Source: Rebecca billardiae RCC1528
Lineage: Eukaryota > Protista > Haptophyta
DNA length: 64,000 nt
Reading direction: 5' to 3'
NCBI GenBank assembly: GCA_965240325.2
Contig: OZ251230.1
Location: 1,426,001-1,490,000, forward strand
Under the pieces are notes generated by a model. That model made no database searches and was not told the DNA's origin. It worked only from the letters and a program-made list of their open reading frames with translations. This document shows, in pieces, positions 34,105-44,200 of this stretch. Numbering within the stretch: the stretch's first letter is position 1; every line of letters begins with the position of its first letter. The translations under genes were made by a program, and so were the position numbers.

Positions 34105-35013
34105 GTGGGTGCTCGTCAACTCGAGGCGCGCGCGACGGCGGGCGCGGCCAGGGTCGTGGTCGCCTTCCCAGCCAAGCTGGCCGGCATGGTCGGCCTGAAG
34201 CACCGCAAGTGCGATCACACGGGCTGCACCACGCGGCCTCACTTCGGCATGCCAGGCGACATGCGTGCCAGCCGGTGCGCTGCGCACAAGCTGGCCGGCA
34301 TGGTCGACCTGAAGAGCCGCAAGTGCGATCACACGGGCTGCACCACGCAGCCTTACTTCGGCATGCCGGGTGACGCGCGTGCCAGCCGGTGCGCTGCGCA
34401 CAAGCTGGCCGGCATGGTCGACCTGAAGCACCCCAAGTGCGATCACACGGGCTGCACCGCGGGGCCTTCATTCGGCATGCCGGGTGACGCGCGTGCCAGC
34501 CGGTGCGCTACGCACAAGCTGGCCGGCATGGTGAACGTGAGGAGCCCCAAGTGTGATCACACTGGCTGCACCACGCGGCCTAACTTCGGCATGCCGGGAG
34601 ACGCGCGCGCCAGCCGGTGCGCTGCGCACAAGCTGGCCGGCATGGTCGACCTGAAGAACCCCAAGTGCGATCACACGGGCTGCACCACGCGGCCTTCATT
34701 CGGCATGGCAGGCGACGCGCGCGCCAGCCGGTGCGCTGCGCACAAGCTGGCAGGCATGAAGAGCCATCGGAGTTCAGGTCGGCACAAGCGCGGGCTGCAG
34801 CAAGACATGAAGAGCCCCAACGAAGTGATGAGCGCCGCCAAGCGACAGCGAAAGCGCGCCAGCAGCACAGCCACTGCTCCGGACGTTGTGGCAGCGCGGC
34901 GGCCGCGATCATCGCAGCTGCCGCAGCTGGTCACAGCCAGCGTCGTCTCGACGCCGTCGTGTGAACGACCCGTGGTGATGGCCAGGCGTGTGACCGAGGG
35001 GAGCCGGGCCTGA
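34105..35013 (+). CDS. EsV-1-7-type cysteine-rich repeat protein (5 repeats of 38 aa) with a basic NLS-like tail
   Basis: 114-bp tandem repeats encoding C-x4-C-x16-C-x2-H-KLAGMV; tail contains AAKRQRKR and ends near PVVMARRV. True start uncertain (first ATG 34186; possible acceptor ttcccag just upstream). Confidence 0.8.
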   Translation: MGARQLEARATAGAARVVVAFPAKLAGMVGLKHRKCDHTGCTTRPHFGMPGDMRASRCAAHKLAGMVDLKSRKCDHTGCTTQPYFGMPGDARASRCAAHKLAGMVDLKHPKCDHTGCTAGPSFGMPGDARASRCATHKLAGMVNVRSPKCDHTGCTTRPNFGMPGDARASRCAAHKLAGMVDLKNPKCDHTGCTTRPSFGMAGDARASRCAAHKLAGMKSHRSSGRHKRGLQQDMKSPNEVMSAAKRQRKRASSTATAPDVVAARRPRSSQLPQLVTASVVSTPSCERPVVMARRVTEGSRA

Positions 35014-37183: not shown

Positions 37184-38545
37184 ATGACGACGCGGAGCGT
37201 CGCCTTGTCCGTCGGCGCGCTCGCCGCGACCGCGGCGGTCGCGGTGGTGCTGGTCGTACGGCGGCGCGCGCGCGCGCGATCCAGCTCATCGAGTGCGAGC
37301 CCAGTCACGTCGCCTACGCTTCGCAAGCTGCCATCCGTCGCGCCGAGCGCGCCCGCGCCCGCGCCCGTCCTTGCCCACTCGCTCACCGCGGAGACTGTGA
37401 AGCTGATTGAGGCGTCCACGCCGGTGGTGGGCTCTCTCGAGGCGGCGCGCATCTTCTACACCGGCCTCTTCGAGGCCGAGCCCGAGCTGCGCACCCTCTT
37501 CAAGGACCCGACGGCGCAGGAGCGCAAGCTGGTCGGCATGCTCAAGTGGGTGAACGCGACCATCGGCGAGCCGCAGAAGCTGCACACGGGCCTGCGCGAG
37601 CTGGGCGAGCGGCACGTCAAGTACAATGCGCAGCTGAGCCACTTCCGCTCGATCAAGGCCTCGTTCCTCCACATGGTCTCCATCGTCGACCAGCAGTCCC
37701 TCGAGCGCGGGATCGTCGCCGACGAGGACGAGGAGGACCAGTCGACGTCCGGGCGGAGCGGCAGGCGCTCGAGCGACGCGTCACGCGCGCCGTCGGCGGT
37801 GACGCCCAAGCCGATCGACCGCGAGCAGCGGCTGCGCGAGGTCTCGCGCGCGTGGGAGGCCCTGCTCTACGTCTTCGTGGGCGAGATGGGCCCGGCGATG
37901 CTCCTGCAGGAGCAGCTGGCAGGATTTCACGCCGCGCTCAAGAACGACCTCGCAGCGCCGGCGGGCGGCACGTGCGTCGCGCTGGCGGGCGCGCAGGGGG
38001 CGGCGCTGGTCGCGATGGCGGCCGCGCTCACGCGCGCGCCTCGATCAGGCTCGCGCGAGCGTGGCTTCATCGACGCGGCCGTGCACAAGCTCGAGGCCGC
38101 GACCTCGGCACTTGAGACGCTGGCCAGTGGGGACATGGCCGCGTACTGCGCGGTGATGGCCGCTGTGCGCCAGCCGCCGCTCGGCGCGGCGGAGGCGCGG
38201 ACCGAGGCGATCGCGACGGCGCTCGAGTACGCGGCGCGCGCACCGCTCCAGGTCGCGCAGTGGGCGGCGTACGCCCTCGACGTCGCCCGCTGCATCGCCC
38301 CCCTCGCCGCCAACTCTGGCGTGGGAGATCTAGGCGCGGGGGCGTCTCTGCTGGTCGCGGCCGGCCGCACCTCCGTGCAGAACGTTGGGATCAACACGGG
38401 CGCCAAGCTGGCGCGCCACGGGGGCAGGCGCTGGCATCGCGACGTGCAGCGGCGCGCGCTCGAGGTCGGCCGCGAGATCGATCGGCTCGAGGCCGAGGTG
38501 AACACGCTGGTGTCGCGACGCATGCGCGCGGCTACCAGTGGCTAG
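37184..38545 (+). CDS. Membrane-anchored globin / formiminotetrahydrofolate cyclodeaminase (FTCD_C) fusion protein
   Basis: N-terminal TM (VALSVGALAATAAVAVVLVV-RRR); globin (IFYTGLFEAEPELRTLFK..AQERKL..LRELGERHVKY..HF..AWEAL); FTCD_C (APAGGTCVALAGAQGAALVAMAAALT..GDMAAYCAVMAA..ALEYAARAPLQVA..DLGAGASLL..NVGIN). Single uninterrupted ORF. Confidence 0.82.
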   Translation: MTTRSVALSVGALAATAAVAVVLVVRRRARARSSSSSASPVTSPTLRKLPSVAPSAPAPAPVLAHSLTAETVKLIEASTPVVGSLEAARIFYTGLFEAEPELRTLFKDPTAQERKLVGMLKWVNATIGEPQKLHTGLRELGERHVKYNAQLSHFRSIKASFLHMVSIVDQQSLERGIVADEDEEDQSTSGRSGRRSSDASRAPSAVTPKPIDREQRLREVSRAWEALLYVFVGEMGPAMLLQEQLAGFHAALKNDLAAPAGGTCVALAGAQGAALVAMAAALTRAPRSGSRERGFIDAAVHKLEAATSALETLASGDMAAYCAVMAAVRQPPLGAAEARTEAIATALEYAARAPLQVAQWAAYALDVARCIAPLAANSGVGDLGAGASLLVAAGRTSVQNVGINTGAKLARHGGRRWHRDVQRRALEVGREIDRLEAEVNTLVSRRMRAATSG

Positions 38546-40151: not shown

Positions 40152-41102
40152 TCATGATGGTGCGGTGACATCAGGTGGGGTGATCACTCCGGCCTCGACT
40201 AGCTTCGCGCACAGCGGTGTCTGCGCACCCACGGAGTACGTGATGCCACACCGCTCGAAGTGCGACGGATCCCGCTCCAGCCTCTCGAGCACGTCATCGA
40301 GCAGCATCGCCCTGTCCGCAGCCATCCCGCCACCGACCGCCGGGCAAGTCACGCAGTTGAAGTGCACATGGGCCACCCAGAAGGAGGGCAGGTAGTGGAA
40401 GTAGGCGCGCACCTTGGACGCGGGGATGCCGTACGCGGCGTGCACGCGCACCAGGAGCTCGTCGCGCAGGTTGCGTAGCGGCGCGGCGTGCTTCGCGCGC
40501 AGGTCGCGCACCGAGCGCACGGACGTGTCCCGGAAGAGAGCGAGCACGTACATCGCCTGCATGTCCTTGCCGTCCCACTTTGAGTCGCGCACGACGACAA
40601 AGTGCGAGTCCTCGTGGACGCGCGCGTCGTTCTCGGCGCGGCCCTCGAGGATGGCGTGTACCCACGCCGTCTGCTTCTCGGGGAGCGACTGCACGTACGG
40701 AAGCGTGATGTCGCGGTAGATGGCGGGCGTCTCGCGCACCACGTACGTCGGCTGCTCCGTGTACTTGAGGACGTCGACGTCGTTCGCGGGGCAGATGAGC
40801 GTGAGCGAAACACCCGTGCGCGCAGGGCCAGAGTGCTTCGAGAACTTGTCGTTGCGATGCTCCTCGGCCAGCTCGTTCTGCCCCCCTTCCACAAGCTCGC
40901 GCAGCTCAGCCTCTGTCCACGGCGACTTTGACGCGACGACAACCGCGCGCTCGGCGGCACCCGCATGGCGCCGAGCGAAGACGGCCGACATGCGATGCGC
41001 GTATGTGTCGTTGAAAAGCAGCCGCTCGAAGCTCAGGCCGGCCGGCACAGCCCCCCCCTCCTCCAGCTCGCGCTTCCGTCCAGCCAAGTCGTGTGATGAC
41101 AT
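40152..41102 (-). CDS. DCPS: m7GpppX diphosphatase (scavenger decapping enzyme)
   Basis: LICPA..KY..VVRETPAIY..ITLPY, WV..IL.G..E, DSKWDG, SVRDLR, HIT-like FHYLPSFWVAHVHF. Confidence 0.92.
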   Translation of the reverse strand: MSSHDLAGRKRELEEGGAVPAGLSFERLLFNDTYAHRMSAVFARRHAGAAERAVVVASKSPWTEAELRELVEGGQNELAEEHRNDKFSKHSGPARTGVSLTLICPANDVDVLKYTEQPTYVVRETPAIYRDITLPYVQSLPEKQTAWVHAILEGRAENDARVHEDSHFVVVRDSKWDGKDMQAMYVLALFRDTSVRSVRDLRAKHAAPLRNLRDELLVRVHAAYGIPASKVRAYFHYLPSFWVAHVHFNCVTCPAVGGGMAADRAMLLDDVLERLERDPSHFERCGITYSVGAQTPLCAKLVEAGVITPPDVTAPS

Positions 41103-41232
41103 GCTTGCTCACGGCCGGTCACGATGCCGGGCGTATTCCACACGCAGGCTGAGTCCGGGGCACTCCGAAAGGCGGGCGCGGAAAGCCAACCGTCGCCCGC
41201 CCCGGACTTTGCGCCTTGCTGCTCGCAGAGGC

Positions 41233-44200
41233 ATGGCGACTCGCGTCGAAGCCGCGGGCGCATCTGCGGAGGAGGACGAGCGCGAGGCCGCCGGCGCTGA
41301 AGCTGGCGACGGGGATCTGCCGTCGGCGCGCAAGGCCGTCGATCGTGATGCTGCCCGGCTCGAGCAGCAGCGGCTCGACGAGCTCCGGCGAGAGCGCAAG
41401 CGCGAGCTGGACAAGCTGCGCGAAGCGCAGACGACCCATCCCGCGGACGACGGCGCCGACACGTCGGGTGCGGCGAGTCTCGAGAGCCGGCTGCAGCTGT
41501 TGATGCGGCAGTCGGACCTGTACACGCAGTCGATGCGCGCGGGCGACGCCGTCGGCGCGGGCGGCGGCGGCGGCGGCGCGGCGGGCGGCGCGGGCACCGG
41601 GCGGCGCGGCAAGGGGCGCATGACGGAGAAGCAGGAGGACGCGATGCTCATGCAGACGGCGGACGGCTCGCAGGCGACGCACGCGCCGGGCACGCGGCTC
41701 ACCGTCCAGCCGGCCTCCGTCACCGGCGAGATGCGCTCGTACCAGCTCGAGGGCCTCAACTGGCTCGTGCGGCTGTTTGACAACGGGATCAACGGCATCC
41801 TCGCGGACGAGATGGGTCTGGGGAAGACGCTGCAGACGCTCAGCCTGCTGGCGTACCTCAAGTCGTACCGCGCGTTCCCTGGGCCGCACCTCGTGATCGT
41901 GCCCAAGTCGACCATCGGCAACTGGTCGCGCGAGTGCGCGCGCTGGACGCCCGAGCTCCGCTGCTTCAAGTTCCACGGCGACAAGGAGGCGCGCGAGAAG
42001 CTGCGCACCGAGGTCCTCGCCTGCATCGACTTCGACCTGTGCATCACGACGTACGAGGTGGCGATCTCCGAGAAGAGCGCGATCCGGAAGATCAAGTGGA
42101 AGTGCGCGCGCGCGCGCGTGTGCGCGCTGGGCGGTTGCGGCGCCGGGGCTGCACATGCTGAGCGTGCGCGCGCCCACGCCCGCCCGCCCGCGCCCGCGCC
42201 CTCGCCCGCGCCCTCGCGCCCGCGCGCGCCCACGCGCGCGCCCTCGCCCGCGCAGCTACCTGATCATCGACGAGGCGCACCGCATCAAGAACGAGACGTC
42301 GGTGCTCGCGCAGGTGGTGCGGCTGTTCGAGACGAACAACCGGCTGCTGATCACCGGCACGCCGCTGCAGAACAACCTGCACGAGCTGTGGGCAATGCTC
42401 AACTTCCTACTGCCCGACATCTTCTCAGACGCGGCCGACTTTGACGCGTGGTTTGGCGCGGCCGAGACGGGCGACGCGCCCGCCGACGAGTTCATCTCGA
42501 AGCTGCACAAGATCCTGAAGCCGTTCCTGCTGCGCCGGCTGAAGGCCGACGTGGAGACAGAGCTGCTGCCGAAGAAGGAGGTCAAGCTCTTCGTCGGCAT
42601 GTCCGAGATGCAGCGCACGTGGTACCAGAACATTCTGTCCAAGAACATCGACGCGCTCAACGCGGGCGCGAACCGCGTGCGCATGCTCAACATCCTGATG
42701 CAGCTGCGCAAGTGCGTGAACCACCCGTACCTGTTCGAGGGTGCGGAGCAGCCGCCGTTCACGAACGACGAGCGGCTCGTGCGCGCCTCGGGCAAGCTCG
42801 AGCTGCTGGACAAGCTGCTGCCGCGCCTCAAGGCGGACGGACACCGAGTGCTCGTCTTCTCGCAGATGGTGCGCTGCTGCCGCGTGCGCTGCTGCCGCGT
42901 GCGCTGCTGCCGCGTGCGCTGCTGCCGCGTGCGCTGCTGCCGCGTGCGCTGCTGCCGCGTGCGCTGCTGCCGCGGCCGAGCGCGAGCGCGAGCGCCAGCC
43001 GGGCGGCGCGCCCGCGGGTCTGGGCGGAGCGAGCGCGGCGCGGGCGGATCAACCGGCCCGACGGGTGTCGGCGCTCGCGCAGCGCCACCTCGCACCTGTG
43101 TGCGCTCACGACGCCCTCCCCGCCGCGCCGCGCCGCGCCGCGTGTGCGCGCAGACGCGGATGCTCGACATTCTGGAGGACTACTGCTACTGGAAGGAGTT
43201 CGAGTACTGCCGCATCGACGGCAGCACGGGCGGCGAGGCGCGGGACCAGGCGATGGAGGACTTCAACGCCGAGGGCTCCTCCAAGTTCATCTTCCTCCTC
43301 TCGACGCGCGCGGGCGGGCTCGGGATCAACCTGGCGACGGCCGACACGGTCATCCTGTACGACTCGGACTGGAACCCGCAGATGGACCTGCAGGCGCAGG
43401 ACCGCGCGCACCGGATCGGTCAGAAGAAGCGCGTGGTGTGCTACCGCTTCGTCACCGAGGGCACGGTCGAGGAGAAGATCGTCGAGCGCGCGCAGCGCAA
43501 GCTGTACCTCGACGCCGTGGTGATCCAACAGGGCCGGCTGGTCGAGCAGGACAAGCAGCTCGACAAGAACGAGCTGCAGAACATGATCCGCTTCGGCGCG
43601 GACGCGATCTTCCACGGGCAGGGCGTCGTGCGCGACGAGGACCTGAACGCGCTGCTCGCGTACGGCGAGCAGAAGACCAACGAGGAGCACCAGAAGCTGC
43701 AGTCCACCGTCAACTCGCTCGCCAACTTCTCGCTCACCGCGGGCGGCGCGGCCGAGAAGTCGCTGTACGACTACAACGGCGAGGACTTCCGCGAGCTGCA
43801 GCCGGAGGAGGGGAGCGGGCTGCACTTCATCTCGCTGCCGAAGCGCGACCGCAAGGCGAACTACGACGTGGACGGCGAGTTCGCGCGGCAGATGAACAGG
43901 CAGGGCGGCGGCGAGAAGGGCGGCGGGCGCAAGCAGTACTTCGACTTCCAGCTGTTTGACGTGCGGCGCATCGAGGAGCTGAGCGCTAAGGAGGCGGCGC
44001 ACTGGGCGCGCAAGCAGGAGCGGCGCGCGTCGCGCTCGGCGCGCGAGGAGGAGGAGGAGGAGGACGGCGGCGCGCCCGCGCTCACGCGCGCCGAGCAGCT
44101 CGAGAAGGCCGAGCTGCTCAAGCAGGGCTTCGCCGACTGGACGCGCAAGGACTTCAACGCGTTCGTGAGAGGCTGCGAGCTGCACGGCCGCGACAACCTG

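What the first reader, a model, noticed from the sequence alone, without database searches (positions are those of the whole stretch)
37184..38545. Membrane-anchored globin fused to a folate cyclodeaminase (FTCD_C) domain: candidate gas- or redox-regulated one-carbon enzyme
Seen: one intronless 453-aa ORF with an N-terminal TM helix plus basic cluster, an S/P-rich linker, a globin (about 37380-37890) and, directly after it, an FTCD_C-like domain (about 37910-38520). The globin has Tyr at B10 (FYTGLF), Phe at CD1 (RTLFK), Gln at E7 (AQERKL) and the proximal His (LGERHVKY), plus a ~45-aa acidic/low-complexity insert before the last helix. The second domain keeps the PxGG..AL.GA.GAAL..M motif, the D..A[YF] position and the C-terminal NV.IN. 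Established: TyrB10/GlnE7 pockets typify flavohaemoglobin-like and single-domain globins that handle O2/NO, and FTCD_C acts on formimino/methenyl-THF. Inference: I do not know this architecture as a described family. It could couple haem ligand binding to folate one-carbon flux at an organelle surface, or reuse FTCD_C as an oligomerisation/output module.
Basis: partly seen in the sequence, partly recalled or inferred. Interest (0 to 1): 0.85.

Follow-up and report, generated by a model that had tools for sequence, protein, structure and literature searches.

The report
Membrane-anchored globin fused to folate domain
A haptophyte alga (Pavlovales group) has a real, conserved gene that joins a membrane anchor, a haem-binding globin of the nitric-oxide/oxygen-handling type and a folate cyclodeaminase/cyclohydrolase-type domain in one protein. 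I found no paper describing this combination, and its function is still untested.

Summary
Window 37184-38545 (+) is one 453-aa ORF with strong in-frame codon bias. It encodes an N-terminal hydrophobic anchor plus Arg cluster, a Pro/Ser linker, a 3-on-3 globin and a complete FTCD_C domain.

- **Globin:** TyrB10, PheCD1, GlnE7, LysE10, ArgF7, HisF8 and TyrF11 are present. The fold matches Hell's Gate globin I at Z 16.7.
- **FTCD_C:** Pfam 88.5 bits. The fold matches methenyl-THF cyclohydrolase FchA at Z 23.1.
- **Family:** The architecture is kept at 40-54% identity. Members include a paralogue in the same genome (also noted by this scan on another piece), two Diacronema lutheri genes, Pavlovales sp. 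CCMP2436 and an outer clade from unidentified eukaryotes.
- **Exclusivity:** Among the best 150 hits of a profile search of 1.84 billion protein representatives, only this family combines both domains.
- **Most conserved stretch:** the globin H helix and the domain junction.
- **FTCD_C residues:** The 11 positions conserved at ≥96% in stand-alone enzymes other than one Gly are kept. The 99%-conserved Gly and about eight positions conserved at 63-85% are changed.
- **Classification:** It is a flavohaemoglobin-type globin, not a sensor-type one, with a new partner domain.

Function is inferred only. My best guess is a cytosol-facing, membrane-tethered haem protein mechanically coupled to a folate/pterin site. 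No expression data could be obtained. No paper found describes it.

The parts
37184..38545 (+). Whole intronless ORF, 453 aa plus stop codon (protein P0001)
   Evidence: One search lists the ORF. One search finds homologues with E values down to 4.5e-121. One search gives in-frame GC3 of 0.916. One search shows three public assembly contigs that are 100% collinear with the window.
37199..37255 (+). N-terminal hydrophobic segment (residues 6-24), a predicted signal-anchor transmembrane helix
   Evidence: mean Kyte-Doolittle 2.49, and it is the only strongly hydrophobic 19-mer outside the folded domains. An equivalent segment is present in 11 of the 15 relatives scanned; three of the other four appear N-terminally truncated. 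models it as a helix (residues 10-32).
37259..37279 (+). Basic cluster RRRARAR (residues 26-32) directly after the hydrophobic segment
   Evidence: the C-flank carries net charge +5 here and +2 to +9 in members that have an N-terminal anchor. By the positive-inside rule this keeps the C-terminal domains on the cytosolic side (inference).
37280..37372 (+). Ser/Pro-rich linker (residues 33-63) holding a conserved LPxxxPxxP motif (P50, P54, P57)
   Evidence: One search shows P50, P54 and P57 as nearly invariant. One search gives pLDDT of 70-85 for residues 41-60, so this motif probably packs against the folded part.
37373..37903 (+). 3-on-3 globin domain (residues 64-240). Y92 (B10) is at 37457-37459, Q112 (E7) at 37517-37519 and H144 (F8) at 37613-37615.
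   Evidence: Z 16.7 to 3s1i; over 14 family members B10 Tyr, E7 Gln, F7 Arg and F8 His are invariant, CD1 Phe is 13/14, E10 Lys 12/14 and F11 Tyr 13/14.
37697..37819 (+). Acidic, low-complexity insert in the loop between globin helices G and H (residues ~172-212)
   Evidence: One search shows variable length, and the insert is missing in P0009 and P0017. One search gives pLDDT under 50 at residues 192-207. One search gives 25% identity in the core clade.
37820..37918 (+). Globin H helix and the junction into FTCD_C (residues 213-245, motif SRAWEALLYVFVGEMGP); the most conserved stretch of the protein
   Evidence: 74% mean identity in the core clade and 52-55% to the outer clade. That is higher than either the globin (55%) or FTCD_C (61%). 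One search shows the motif is kept even in the divergent relative P0080.
37904..38542 (+). FTCD_C (cyclodeaminase/cyclohydrolase-type) all-helical domain (residues 241-453)
   Evidence: searches (88.5 bits; FchA model 58.8 bits, below the equivalog cut-off of 275), (TM 0.88-0.90 by target; Z 23.1 and 22.2). One search shows that 11 of the 12 positions conserved at ≥96% in stand-alone enzymes are retained (all but G260).

Best explanation
Shown: this is a genuine, conserved nuclear gene of a Pavlovales-type haptophyte. It encodes a single-pass signal-anchored protein with a flavohaemoglobin-type (F/M-family) globin joined through its H helix to a complete FTCD_C domain.

Inferred mechanism:
1. 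The short N-terminus and Ala-rich helix insert into a membrane. The Arg cluster holds the rest on the cytosolic face of the ER or an organelle outer membrane.
2. The globin binds haem through His144. Its Tyr-B10/Gln-E7 pocket, with Lys-E10 as a possible sixth ligand as in HGbRL, binds O2 or NO or changes redox state.
3. FTCD_C dimerises as in solved relatives and still binds a formimino-/methenyl-tetrahydrofolate-type ligand.
4. Ligand-driven movement of the globin passes through the rigid, highly conserved H-helix junction and changes activity or binding at the folate site. That would tie local one-carbon (or pterin) chemistry to O2/NO/redox state.

I put the identity and architecture at about 0.95. 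I put this coupled-regulation mechanism at about 0.4.
For: Both domains are supported by sequence and by fold. The haem-pocket and propionate-binding residues described for the solved HGbRL globin in PMC4476040 are Tyr B10, Lys E10, Arg F7 and Tyr F11. They align with Y92, K115, R143 and Y147 and are conserved across 14 members, as are Q112 and H144. The fused architecture is kept at 40-54% identity. It is found in a second paralogue from the same organism (P0007, sample ERR14847150), two D. lutheri genes, CCMP2436 and an outer clade. The D. lutheri copy is also a single intronless ORF on a 3-Mb scaffold. The junction is the most conserved segment. Two independent AlphaFold models give pTM 0.77 and 0.78. 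The FTCD_C positions conserved at ≥96% in stand-alone enzymes, other than G260, are kept: P259, G261, G262, L275, M278, D317, R339, P354, D382, N400 and N404. The anchor plus basic flank is conserved. The HGbRL paper gives a precedent for signal relay from this globin type to a C-terminal domain.
Against: There is no expression, haem or enzyme data. The window copy falls 0.8 bits under Pfam's Globin gathering score. The family replaces the 99%-conserved Gly of the P-G-G-G loop with Ala or Ser. It also changes S254N, P257A, L330Q, K332x, N376A, S381G and D410A relative to 71 stand-alone enzymes, so classical cyclodeaminase or cyclohydrolase activity may be lost or altered. The catalytic residues of the fold could not be taken from a paper, because the relevant papers are not held. 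F-family globins are mostly enzymes (NO dioxygenases) rather than sensors. The relative domain orientation rests on pTM alone.
Confidence: 0.4

Rival explanations
1. The globin is the working part, acting as a membrane-tethered NO dioxygenase, nitrite reductase or peroxidase-type haem enzyme. FTCD_C is then a non-catalytic accessory. It could be a dimerisation scaffold, or a holder of a reduced folate or pterin that serves as cofactor or electron donor to the haem.
For: The Tyr-B10/Gln-E7 pocket and the nearest solved relatives (HGbI, RmaNOD, flavohaemoglobins) belong to the NO-dioxygenase-type group (PMC4476040). FTCD_C has lost several residues that are highly conserved in stand-alone enzymes, including the 99% Gly, the Lys of the L-P-K motif and D410. 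An unidentified eukaryote carries a tandem copy with anchor and globin only, so the globin half can stand alone.
Against: The FTCD_C positions conserved at ≥96% other than G260 are retained, and the domain is more conserved than the globin (61% against 55%). That is not what a mere scaffold would predict. No precedent for a folate-reduced globin was found.
Confidence: 0.3
2. The two domains work independently. The fusion only co-localises a standard folate cyclohydrolase/cyclodeaminase and a standard globin on one membrane, with no allosteric link.
For: Both domains are complete and recognisable on their own. Many eukaryotic fusions are of this co-localising kind (general knowledge).
Against: The junction is the most conserved part of the protein. 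There is no flexible linker between the domains: helix H ends at residue 240 and the FTCD_C helices start at 245. The high pTM argues for a fixed interface. The RAWEA H-helix motif persists in P0080, where it precedes the FTCD_C domain; I also see it by eye in the P0158 sequence.
Confidence: 0.2
3. The fusion is an artefact: two adjacent genes, or a missed intron or stop, read as one ORF in a GC-rich genome where long spurious ORFs are common.
For: The region carries many overlapping spurious ORFs in other frames, and no transcript evidence was available.
Against: The ORF is uninterrupted. The same single-ORF architecture occurs in at least 14 relatives from several organisms, including a D. 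lutheri chromosome-scale scaffold. Codon bias is strongly in frame across the whole ORF. The junction is the best conserved region.
Confidence: 0.02

Closest known systems
HGbRL of Methylacidiphilum infernorum (globin + Roadblock/LC7; PDB 3wfw; PMC4476040)
   Same: It is the best sequence match among solved structures (E 2.9e-10). It belongs to the same bacterial-type group that lacks helix D. It has Tyr B10, Gln E7, Lys E10, Leu E11, Arg F7, His F8 and Tyr F11. The globin is N-terminal to a non-redox partner domain attached to helix H.
   Different: The partner is Roadblock/LC7, not FTCD_C. It is soluble, bacterial and restricted to one genus. The site-swapped dimer with fused E-F helices is not predicted here: the model has separate E and F helices.
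Flavohaemoglobins (Hmp, FHP) and single-domain F-family globins (HGbI, Vitreoscilla Hb, RmaNOD)
   Same: The globin family and distal pocket are the same. The architecture is also chimeric, with the globin first.
   Different: There is no FAD/NAD(P)H reductase module (no such Pfam hit). This protein has a membrane anchor and a folate-type domain instead.
FchA methenyl-THF cyclohydrolase (7vg4) and TM1560 formimino-THF cyclodeaminase (1o5h)
   Same: The fold matches over its full length (Z 23.1 and 22.2). The positions conserved at ≥96% are shared except G260. The nearest sequence relatives are bacterial stand-alone proteins of about 210 aa.
   Different: Identity is only 22-25%. The NCBIfam FchA equivalog score is 58.8 against a cut-off of 275. 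About nine conserved positions are changed. Here the domain is fused and membrane-tethered.
Animal FTCD (58K Golgi protein; formiminotransferase + cyclodeaminase; 1tt9)
   Same: The C-terminal domain family is the same (E 2e-7). Both are eukaryotic and associated with a membrane.
   Different: There is no formiminotransferase domain here. FTCD is peripheral, not anchored by a helix. The FTCD_C of this family scores higher against bacterial stand-alone proteins (79-108 bits) than against the FT-CD proteins sampled (50-73 bits).
Globin-coupled sensors (HemAT, globin-coupled diguanylate cyclases and kinases, membrane-bound Geobacter GCS)
   Same: The concept is the same: an N-terminal globin controlling a C-terminal domain. 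Some of them are membrane-bound.
   Different: Those use S-family (protoglobin-like) sensor globins and signalling outputs. This is an F-family globin (no Protoglobin hit) with a metabolic-enzyme-type partner.

Membership tests
Globin superfamily, F/M family (flavohaemoglobin-type 3-on-3 globins with Tyr B10 / Gln E7) | 3-on-3 alpha-helical globin fold | tested here: met
   The AlphaFold model (pLDDT 81) aligns to HGbI 3s1i at Z 16.7, 128/131 residues, rmsd 1.7. It also aligns to neuroglobin, thermoglobin, RmaNOD and FHP at Z 15-16.
Globin superfamily, F/M family (flavohaemoglobin-type 3-on-3 globins with Tyr B10 / Gln E7) | Proximal His F8, plus Tyr B10, Phe CD1 and Gln E7 | tested here: met
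   H144, Y92, F106 and Q112 align to the corresponding residues of 3wfw. His, Tyr and Gln are invariant in 14/14 members and Phe in 13/14.
Globin superfamily, F/M family (flavohaemoglobin-type 3-on-3 globins with Tyr B10 / Gln E7) | Score above Pfam Globin (PF00042) gathering threshold | tested here: inconclusive
   The window copy scores 21.2 bits against a cut-off of 22. Relatives P0017 (36.2) and P0018 (28.1) pass. 9 of 14 members hit at E<=0.01.
Globin superfamily, F/M family (flavohaemoglobin-type 3-on-3 globins with Tyr B10 / Gln E7) | Binds haem b and a diatomic ligand | not testable with these tools
   This needs recombinant protein and UV-visible spectra.
FTCD_C (PF04961) cyclodeaminase/cyclohydrolase family | Pfam score above gathering threshold, and the full-length all-helical fold | tested here: met
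   88.5 bits against a cut-off of 24.5. Z 23.1 to 7vg4_A with 204/204 residues aligned, and Z 22.2 to 1o5h.
FTCD_C (PF04961) cyclodeaminase/cyclohydrolase family | Family-invariant residues of stand-alone enzymes (P-G-G-G loop, L, M, D, R, P, D, N..N) | tested here: inconclusive
   11 of the 12 positions conserved at >=96% in 71 stand-alone proteins are kept. G260 (99% Gly) is Ala or Ser in all fusion members. Further changes are listed.
FTCD_C (PF04961) cyclodeaminase/cyclohydrolase family | Equivalog of FchA methenyl-THF cyclohydrolase (NCBIfam NF045657) | tested here: not met
   58.8 bits against a cut-off of 275. It is a family member but not an FchA equivalog.
FTCD_C (PF04961) cyclodeaminase/cyclohydrolase family | Cyclodeaminase or cyclohydrolase activity on THF derivatives | not testable with these tools
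   This needs an enzyme assay.
Globin-coupled sensors (S family) | Sensor-type (protoglobin-like) globin domain | tested here: not met
   There is no Protoglobin (PF11563) hit at E<=1. The best matches are F-family globins.
Flavohaemoglobin | C-terminal FAD- and NAD(P)H-binding ferredoxin-reductase module | tested here: not met
   Pfam shows only Globin and FTCD_C. The NCBIfam flavohaemoprotein model matches the globin part only, 19.5 bits against 432.
Bifunctional FTCD (formiminotransferase-cyclodeaminase) | N-terminal formiminotransferase domains (PF07837, PF02971) | tested here: not met
   They are absent from the window protein and present in the true FTCD hits P0011-P0014.

The most novel reading that the evidence does not exclude
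The protein is a folate/pterin analogue of a flavohaemoglobin. The remodelled FTCD_C domain would hold a reduced folate or pterin next to the haem, in the way NOS holds tetrahydrobiopterin. That cofactor would supply the electron that re-reduces or activates the haem during NO/O2 chemistry at a membrane surface. This would be a new way of powering a globin enzyme, and a new non-one-carbon use of the FTCD_C fold.
Probability: 0.1. Interest if true: 0.85.

Novelty: new variant of a known kind. Interest (0 to 1): 0.6.

Why it matters
Known chimeric F-family globins pair the haem domain with a reductase (flavohaemoglobin) or with a few special partners (Roadblock/LC7, NOS, calpain-like). A conserved eukaryotic fusion to a folate-enzyme fold, tethered to a membrane, would add a new class. 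It would also give a directly testable link between O2/NO/redox sensing and one-carbon or pterin metabolism in marine algae. The family is small, intronless and easy to express, so haem spectra and folate assays could settle the question quickly. It also offers a natural test of how signals leave a globin through helix H.

Tried and rejected
**Expression evidence.** The look-up of sequencing runs (kind rna) listed no run, so read laying could not be used. The three public contigs carrying the exact protein (ERR14847148, ERR14847150, ERR14847151) are collinear with the genome and carry no poly(A). They say nothing about transcription.

**Catalytic residues of FTCD_C from the literature.** The rat FTCD structure paper (PMC514939) is not held. 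No paper on 7vg4 or 1o5h was found. I used conservation against 71 stand-alone homologues instead.

**Taxon of the outer clade.** The neighbouring M17 peptidase on the P0017 contig has no close named relative. The best named hits are oomycetes at 40-44% identity, so the organism stays unidentified.

**ESM Atlas.** The feature search gave nothing usable. The shape search returned only bacterial FTCD_C clusters.

**Literature on the architecture.** Searches for globin with cyclodeaminase, formiminotransferase or FTCD returned only unrelated papers.

**Readings rejected.**
- Bipartite plastid signal or cleaved signal peptide: the Arg cluster directly after the hydrophobic core argues for a signal anchor.
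- Bacterial contamination: the gene lies between eukaryotic genes (EsV-1-7 repeats, DcpS, SNF2) and shares their codon bias.
- Strict globin-coupled sensor membership: no S-family signal.
Full report
**1. The observation**

The window holds one uninterrupted ORF at 37184-38545 on the + strand, 453 aa, starting with ATG. The region is 67% G+C and is full of overlapping spurious ORFs in other frames. This frame, however, has a third-position G+C of 0.916, against 0.72 and 0.55 in the two shifted frames. The neighbouring genes have 0.83-0.86.

Pfam finds FTCD_C at residues 246-406 (E 5.9e-25, 88.5 bits, cut-off 24.5). It finds Globin at residues 91-164 (E 4.4e-4, 21.2 bits, just under the cut-off of 22). 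NCBIfam gives the FchA cyclohydrolase model at 58.8 bits, far below its equivalog cut-off of 275. It also gives a weak flavohaemoprotein match restricted to the globin part.

Against solved structures, the best sequence matches are:
- the globin domain of HGbRL from Methylacidiphilum infernorum (3wfw, E 2.9e-10, residues 68-157);
- FchA (7vg4, E 1.1e-8, residues 245-411);
- rat FTCD (1tt9, E 2e-7).

An AlphaFold model built on ten family members has mean pLDDT 81 and pTM 0.77. Its C-terminal domain aligns to FchA over 204 of 204 residues (Z 23.1, rmsd 2.1) and to the Thermotoga cyclodeaminase TM1560 (Z 22.2). Its globin aligns to Hell's Gate globin I over 128 of 131 residues (Z 16.7, rmsd 1.7).

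- Y92 in FYTGLF (B10), F106 (CD1), Q112 (E7) and H144 in GERHVKY (F8);
- the disordered acidic insert at residues ~172-212;
- the P-x-G-G...M, D..AY and NV.IN motifs.

**2. The anchor**

Residues 6-24 form the only strongly hydrophobic 19-mer outside the folded domains (mean Kyte-Doolittle 2.49). They are followed directly by RRRARAR. Most relatives scanned have the same arrangement: three to about twenty residues, an Ala/Val/Leu-rich segment, then a net charge of +2 to +9 in the next 15 residues. The copies that lack it look like truncated gene calls.

By the positive-inside rule (established knowledge), this is a signal anchor that leaves the globin and FTCD_C domains in the cytosol. Moderate hydrophobicity with a basic C-flank is also typical of signal-anchored outer-membrane proteins of mitochondria and plastids. 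The membrane therefore cannot be named from sequence. A conserved LPxxxPxxP motif in the linker is modelled with pLDDT 70-85 and probably packs on the folded part.

**3. It is a family, not an accident**

The word-indexed search found nine relatives of the same length and architecture at 46-54% identity. The named ones are two Diacronema lutheri proteins (KFE25_008859 and KFE25_007707) and one from Pavlovales sp. CCMP2436. That places the window in a Pavlovales-type haptophyte.

P0007 (459 aa, 49% identical) comes from the same sequencing sample as the window's own contigs (ERR14847150). It is therefore a paralogue in this genome.

A maximum-likelihood tree shows at least three old lineages inside the Pavlovales clade. 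P0007 groups with D. lutheri 008859. D. lutheri 007707 groups with CCMP2436. The window copy branches apart. The fusion has therefore been maintained through duplications that predate these species. The D. lutheri gene is also a single intronless 1362-base ORF on a 3-Mb scaffold.

**4. How widespread is the fusion?**

A profile of the family was run against 1.84 billion representative proteins. It gave 7522 hits, and the best 150 were returned. I classified those 150 with separate globin and FTCD_C profiles. Only members of this family contain both domains.

They include an outer clade (P0017, P0018, P0020, P0025, P0169) at about 40% identity. It has the same anchor and PAGGTA instead of PAGGTC. 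Two of its globins pass Pfam's threshold. These come from environmental assemblies. The 391-kb contig carrying P0017 belongs to a eukaryote whose M17 peptidase has no close named relative (best are oomycetes at 40-44%). The fusion may therefore reach beyond Pavlovales, but I cannot say how far.

Two still more distant proteins (P0080, P0158) keep FTCD_C, and in their sequences the H-helix motif RAWEA precedes it. The family's globin profile does not detect a globin in either. For P0080 a profile comparison aligns only from the end of helix F onward.

The next-best hits for the globin half are giant tandem multi-globin proteins, including ones from Bodo saltans, Sulcionema and Papus. The next-best for the FTCD_C half are bacterial stand-alone proteins of about 210 aa, such as one from an Ardenticatenia MAG.

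**5. What the residues say**

Globin. The HGbRL paper (PMC4476040) describes the pocket of the closest solved relative:
- Tyr28 (B10);
- Lys52 (E10), which becomes the sixth haem ligand in the closed form;
- Arg80 and Tyr84, which bind a haem propionate.

The paper also places HGbRL in the group of bacterial globins that conserve Tyr B10 and Gln E7. In the alignment these positions correspond to Y92, Q112, K115, R143 and Y147, with the proximal His at H144. Over 14 family members, B10 Tyr, E7 Gln, F7 Arg and F8 His are invariant. CD1 Phe and F11 Tyr are 13/14 and E10 Lys is 12/14. This is strong indirect evidence for haem binding and for a flavohaemoglobin-type distal site. There is no Protoglobin signal. 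In the three-family scheme of globins (PMC7475203) this is therefore an F-family globin, not an S-family sensor.

FTCD_C. I aligned the family with 71 stand-alone homologues and 4 true FTCD proteins. Eleven of the twelve positions conserved at 96% or more in stand-alone proteins are kept: P259, G261, G262, L275, M278, D317, R339, P354, D382, N400 and N404. The twelfth, G260 (99% Gly), is Ala or Ser in all fusion members. S254N, P257A, L330Q, K332 (variable), N376A, S381G and D410A are further family-specific changes at positions 63-85% conserved. P0080 and P0158 keep the canonical P-G-G-G. The pocket therefore looks retained but remodelled. I could not map catalytic residues because the structure papers are not held.

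Coupling. Mean identity in the core clade is:

| Region | Mean identity, core clade |
|---|---|
| H helix plus junction (residues 213-245) | 74% |
| FTCD_C | 61% |
| Globin helices A-G | 55% |
| Anchor/linker, insert and C-terminal helix | 25-31% |

The model has helix H ending at residue 240 and the first FTCD_C helix starting at 245, with no flexible linker. A second model, built for the outer-clade protein P0017, gives pTM 0.78. With 60-90 disordered residues in each protein, such pTM values suggest a fixed relative placement of the two domains. This is an inference, since I could not inspect coordinates or the error matrix.

**6. Most likely mechanism**

- *Shown:* a conserved gene for anchor + F-family globin + FTCD_C.
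- *Inferred:* the folded part faces the cytosol on the ER or an organelle outer membrane. The globin binds haem and O2/NO or changes redox state. FTCD_C dimerises as its solved relatives do and binds a THF derivative. Ligand-linked movement of the globin is passed through the H-helix junction to the folate site.

I give this coupled reading about 0.4. The main rival, at about 0.3, is that the globin is the catalyst (NO dioxygenase-like) and FTCD_C is a scaffold or cofactor holder. Independent co-localised domains get about 0.2. A gene-model artefact is practically excluded.

**7. Comparison with what is known**

The protein resembles HGbRL in globin type and in having a non-redox C-terminal partner. 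It resembles flavohaemoglobins in its pocket, FchA and TM1560 in its second domain, and globin-coupled sensors in concept. It fails the defining feature of each:
- no Roadblock domain;
- no reductase module;
- not an FchA equivalog;
- no formiminotransferase domain;
- no S-family globin.

Database pipelines have already given some members machine names, for example 'Globin domain-containing protein', 'Formiminotransferase-cyclodeaminase-domain-containing protein' and IMG's 'formiminotetrahydrofolate cyclodeaminase/hemoglobin-like flavoprotein'. I found no paper that mentions the combination. This literature check covers only the held open-access library.

**8. Verdict**

This is a new variant of a known kind: a chimeric F-family globin with a new partner and a membrane anchor, restricted so far to Pavlovales and a few unidentified eukaryotes. 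Interest is 0.6. It is a clean, conserved and easily testable new architecture, but nothing is yet known about its function or expression.

Noticed in passing
L006 (contig ERR14847150_9612), gene at 312-1691: A second anchor + globin + FTCD_C gene (P0007, 459 aa, 49% identical to the window protein) comes from the same sample as the window's own contigs. It is therefore a paralogue in this genome.
   Followed up: partly
L004:9361-10242 (contig ctg9568 of ERZ25074135): Directly downstream of the outer-clade fusion gene P0017 lies a tandem copy (P0045, 86% identical over the first half). It has the anchor and globin but no detectable FTCD_C behind it. It is either a stand-alone membrane globin or a decayed duplicate.
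   Followed up: partly
L005:8001-9500 (P0080) and P0158: These distant relatives keep FTCD_C with the canonical P-G-G-G loop, and the H-helix motif RAWEA is visible in front of it in both sequences. The family's globin profile detects no globin in either, and for P0080 a profile comparison aligns only from the end of helix F onward. They may be haem-less versions of the fusion.
   Followed up: partly
P0015, P0023, P0024, P0026, P0029 (not in the window): The closest globins outside the family are very long proteins with 6-14 tandem globin domains. They include ones from Bodo saltans (CUG06439.1), the diplonemid Sulcionema specki and Papus ankaliazontas. A 2461-aa example lies on a 35-kb metagenome contig.
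   Followed up: no
window 34105-35013 (+): This is a 302-aa ORF made of five EsV-1-7 cysteine-rich repeats (Pfam PF19114, E 1.1e-67). The scan already noted it as s1-338823.
   Followed up: partly
window 40152-41102 (-) and 40720-42444 (+): A DcpS-type scavenger decapping enzyme gene (DcpS_C, E 4.2e-16) lies on the minus strand. A SNF2-related helicase ORF lies on the plus strand, and its 5' part overlaps the DcpS gene. The SNF2 ORF ends in low-complexity sequence after only part of the domain, so that gene probably has an intron or a different start.
   Followed up: no
window 37331-37354 (residues 50-57): The LPxxxPxxP motif in the otherwise variable linker is nearly invariant across the family. 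It is modelled with fairly high confidence, which suggests it docks on the folded domains or binds a partner.
   Followed up: no
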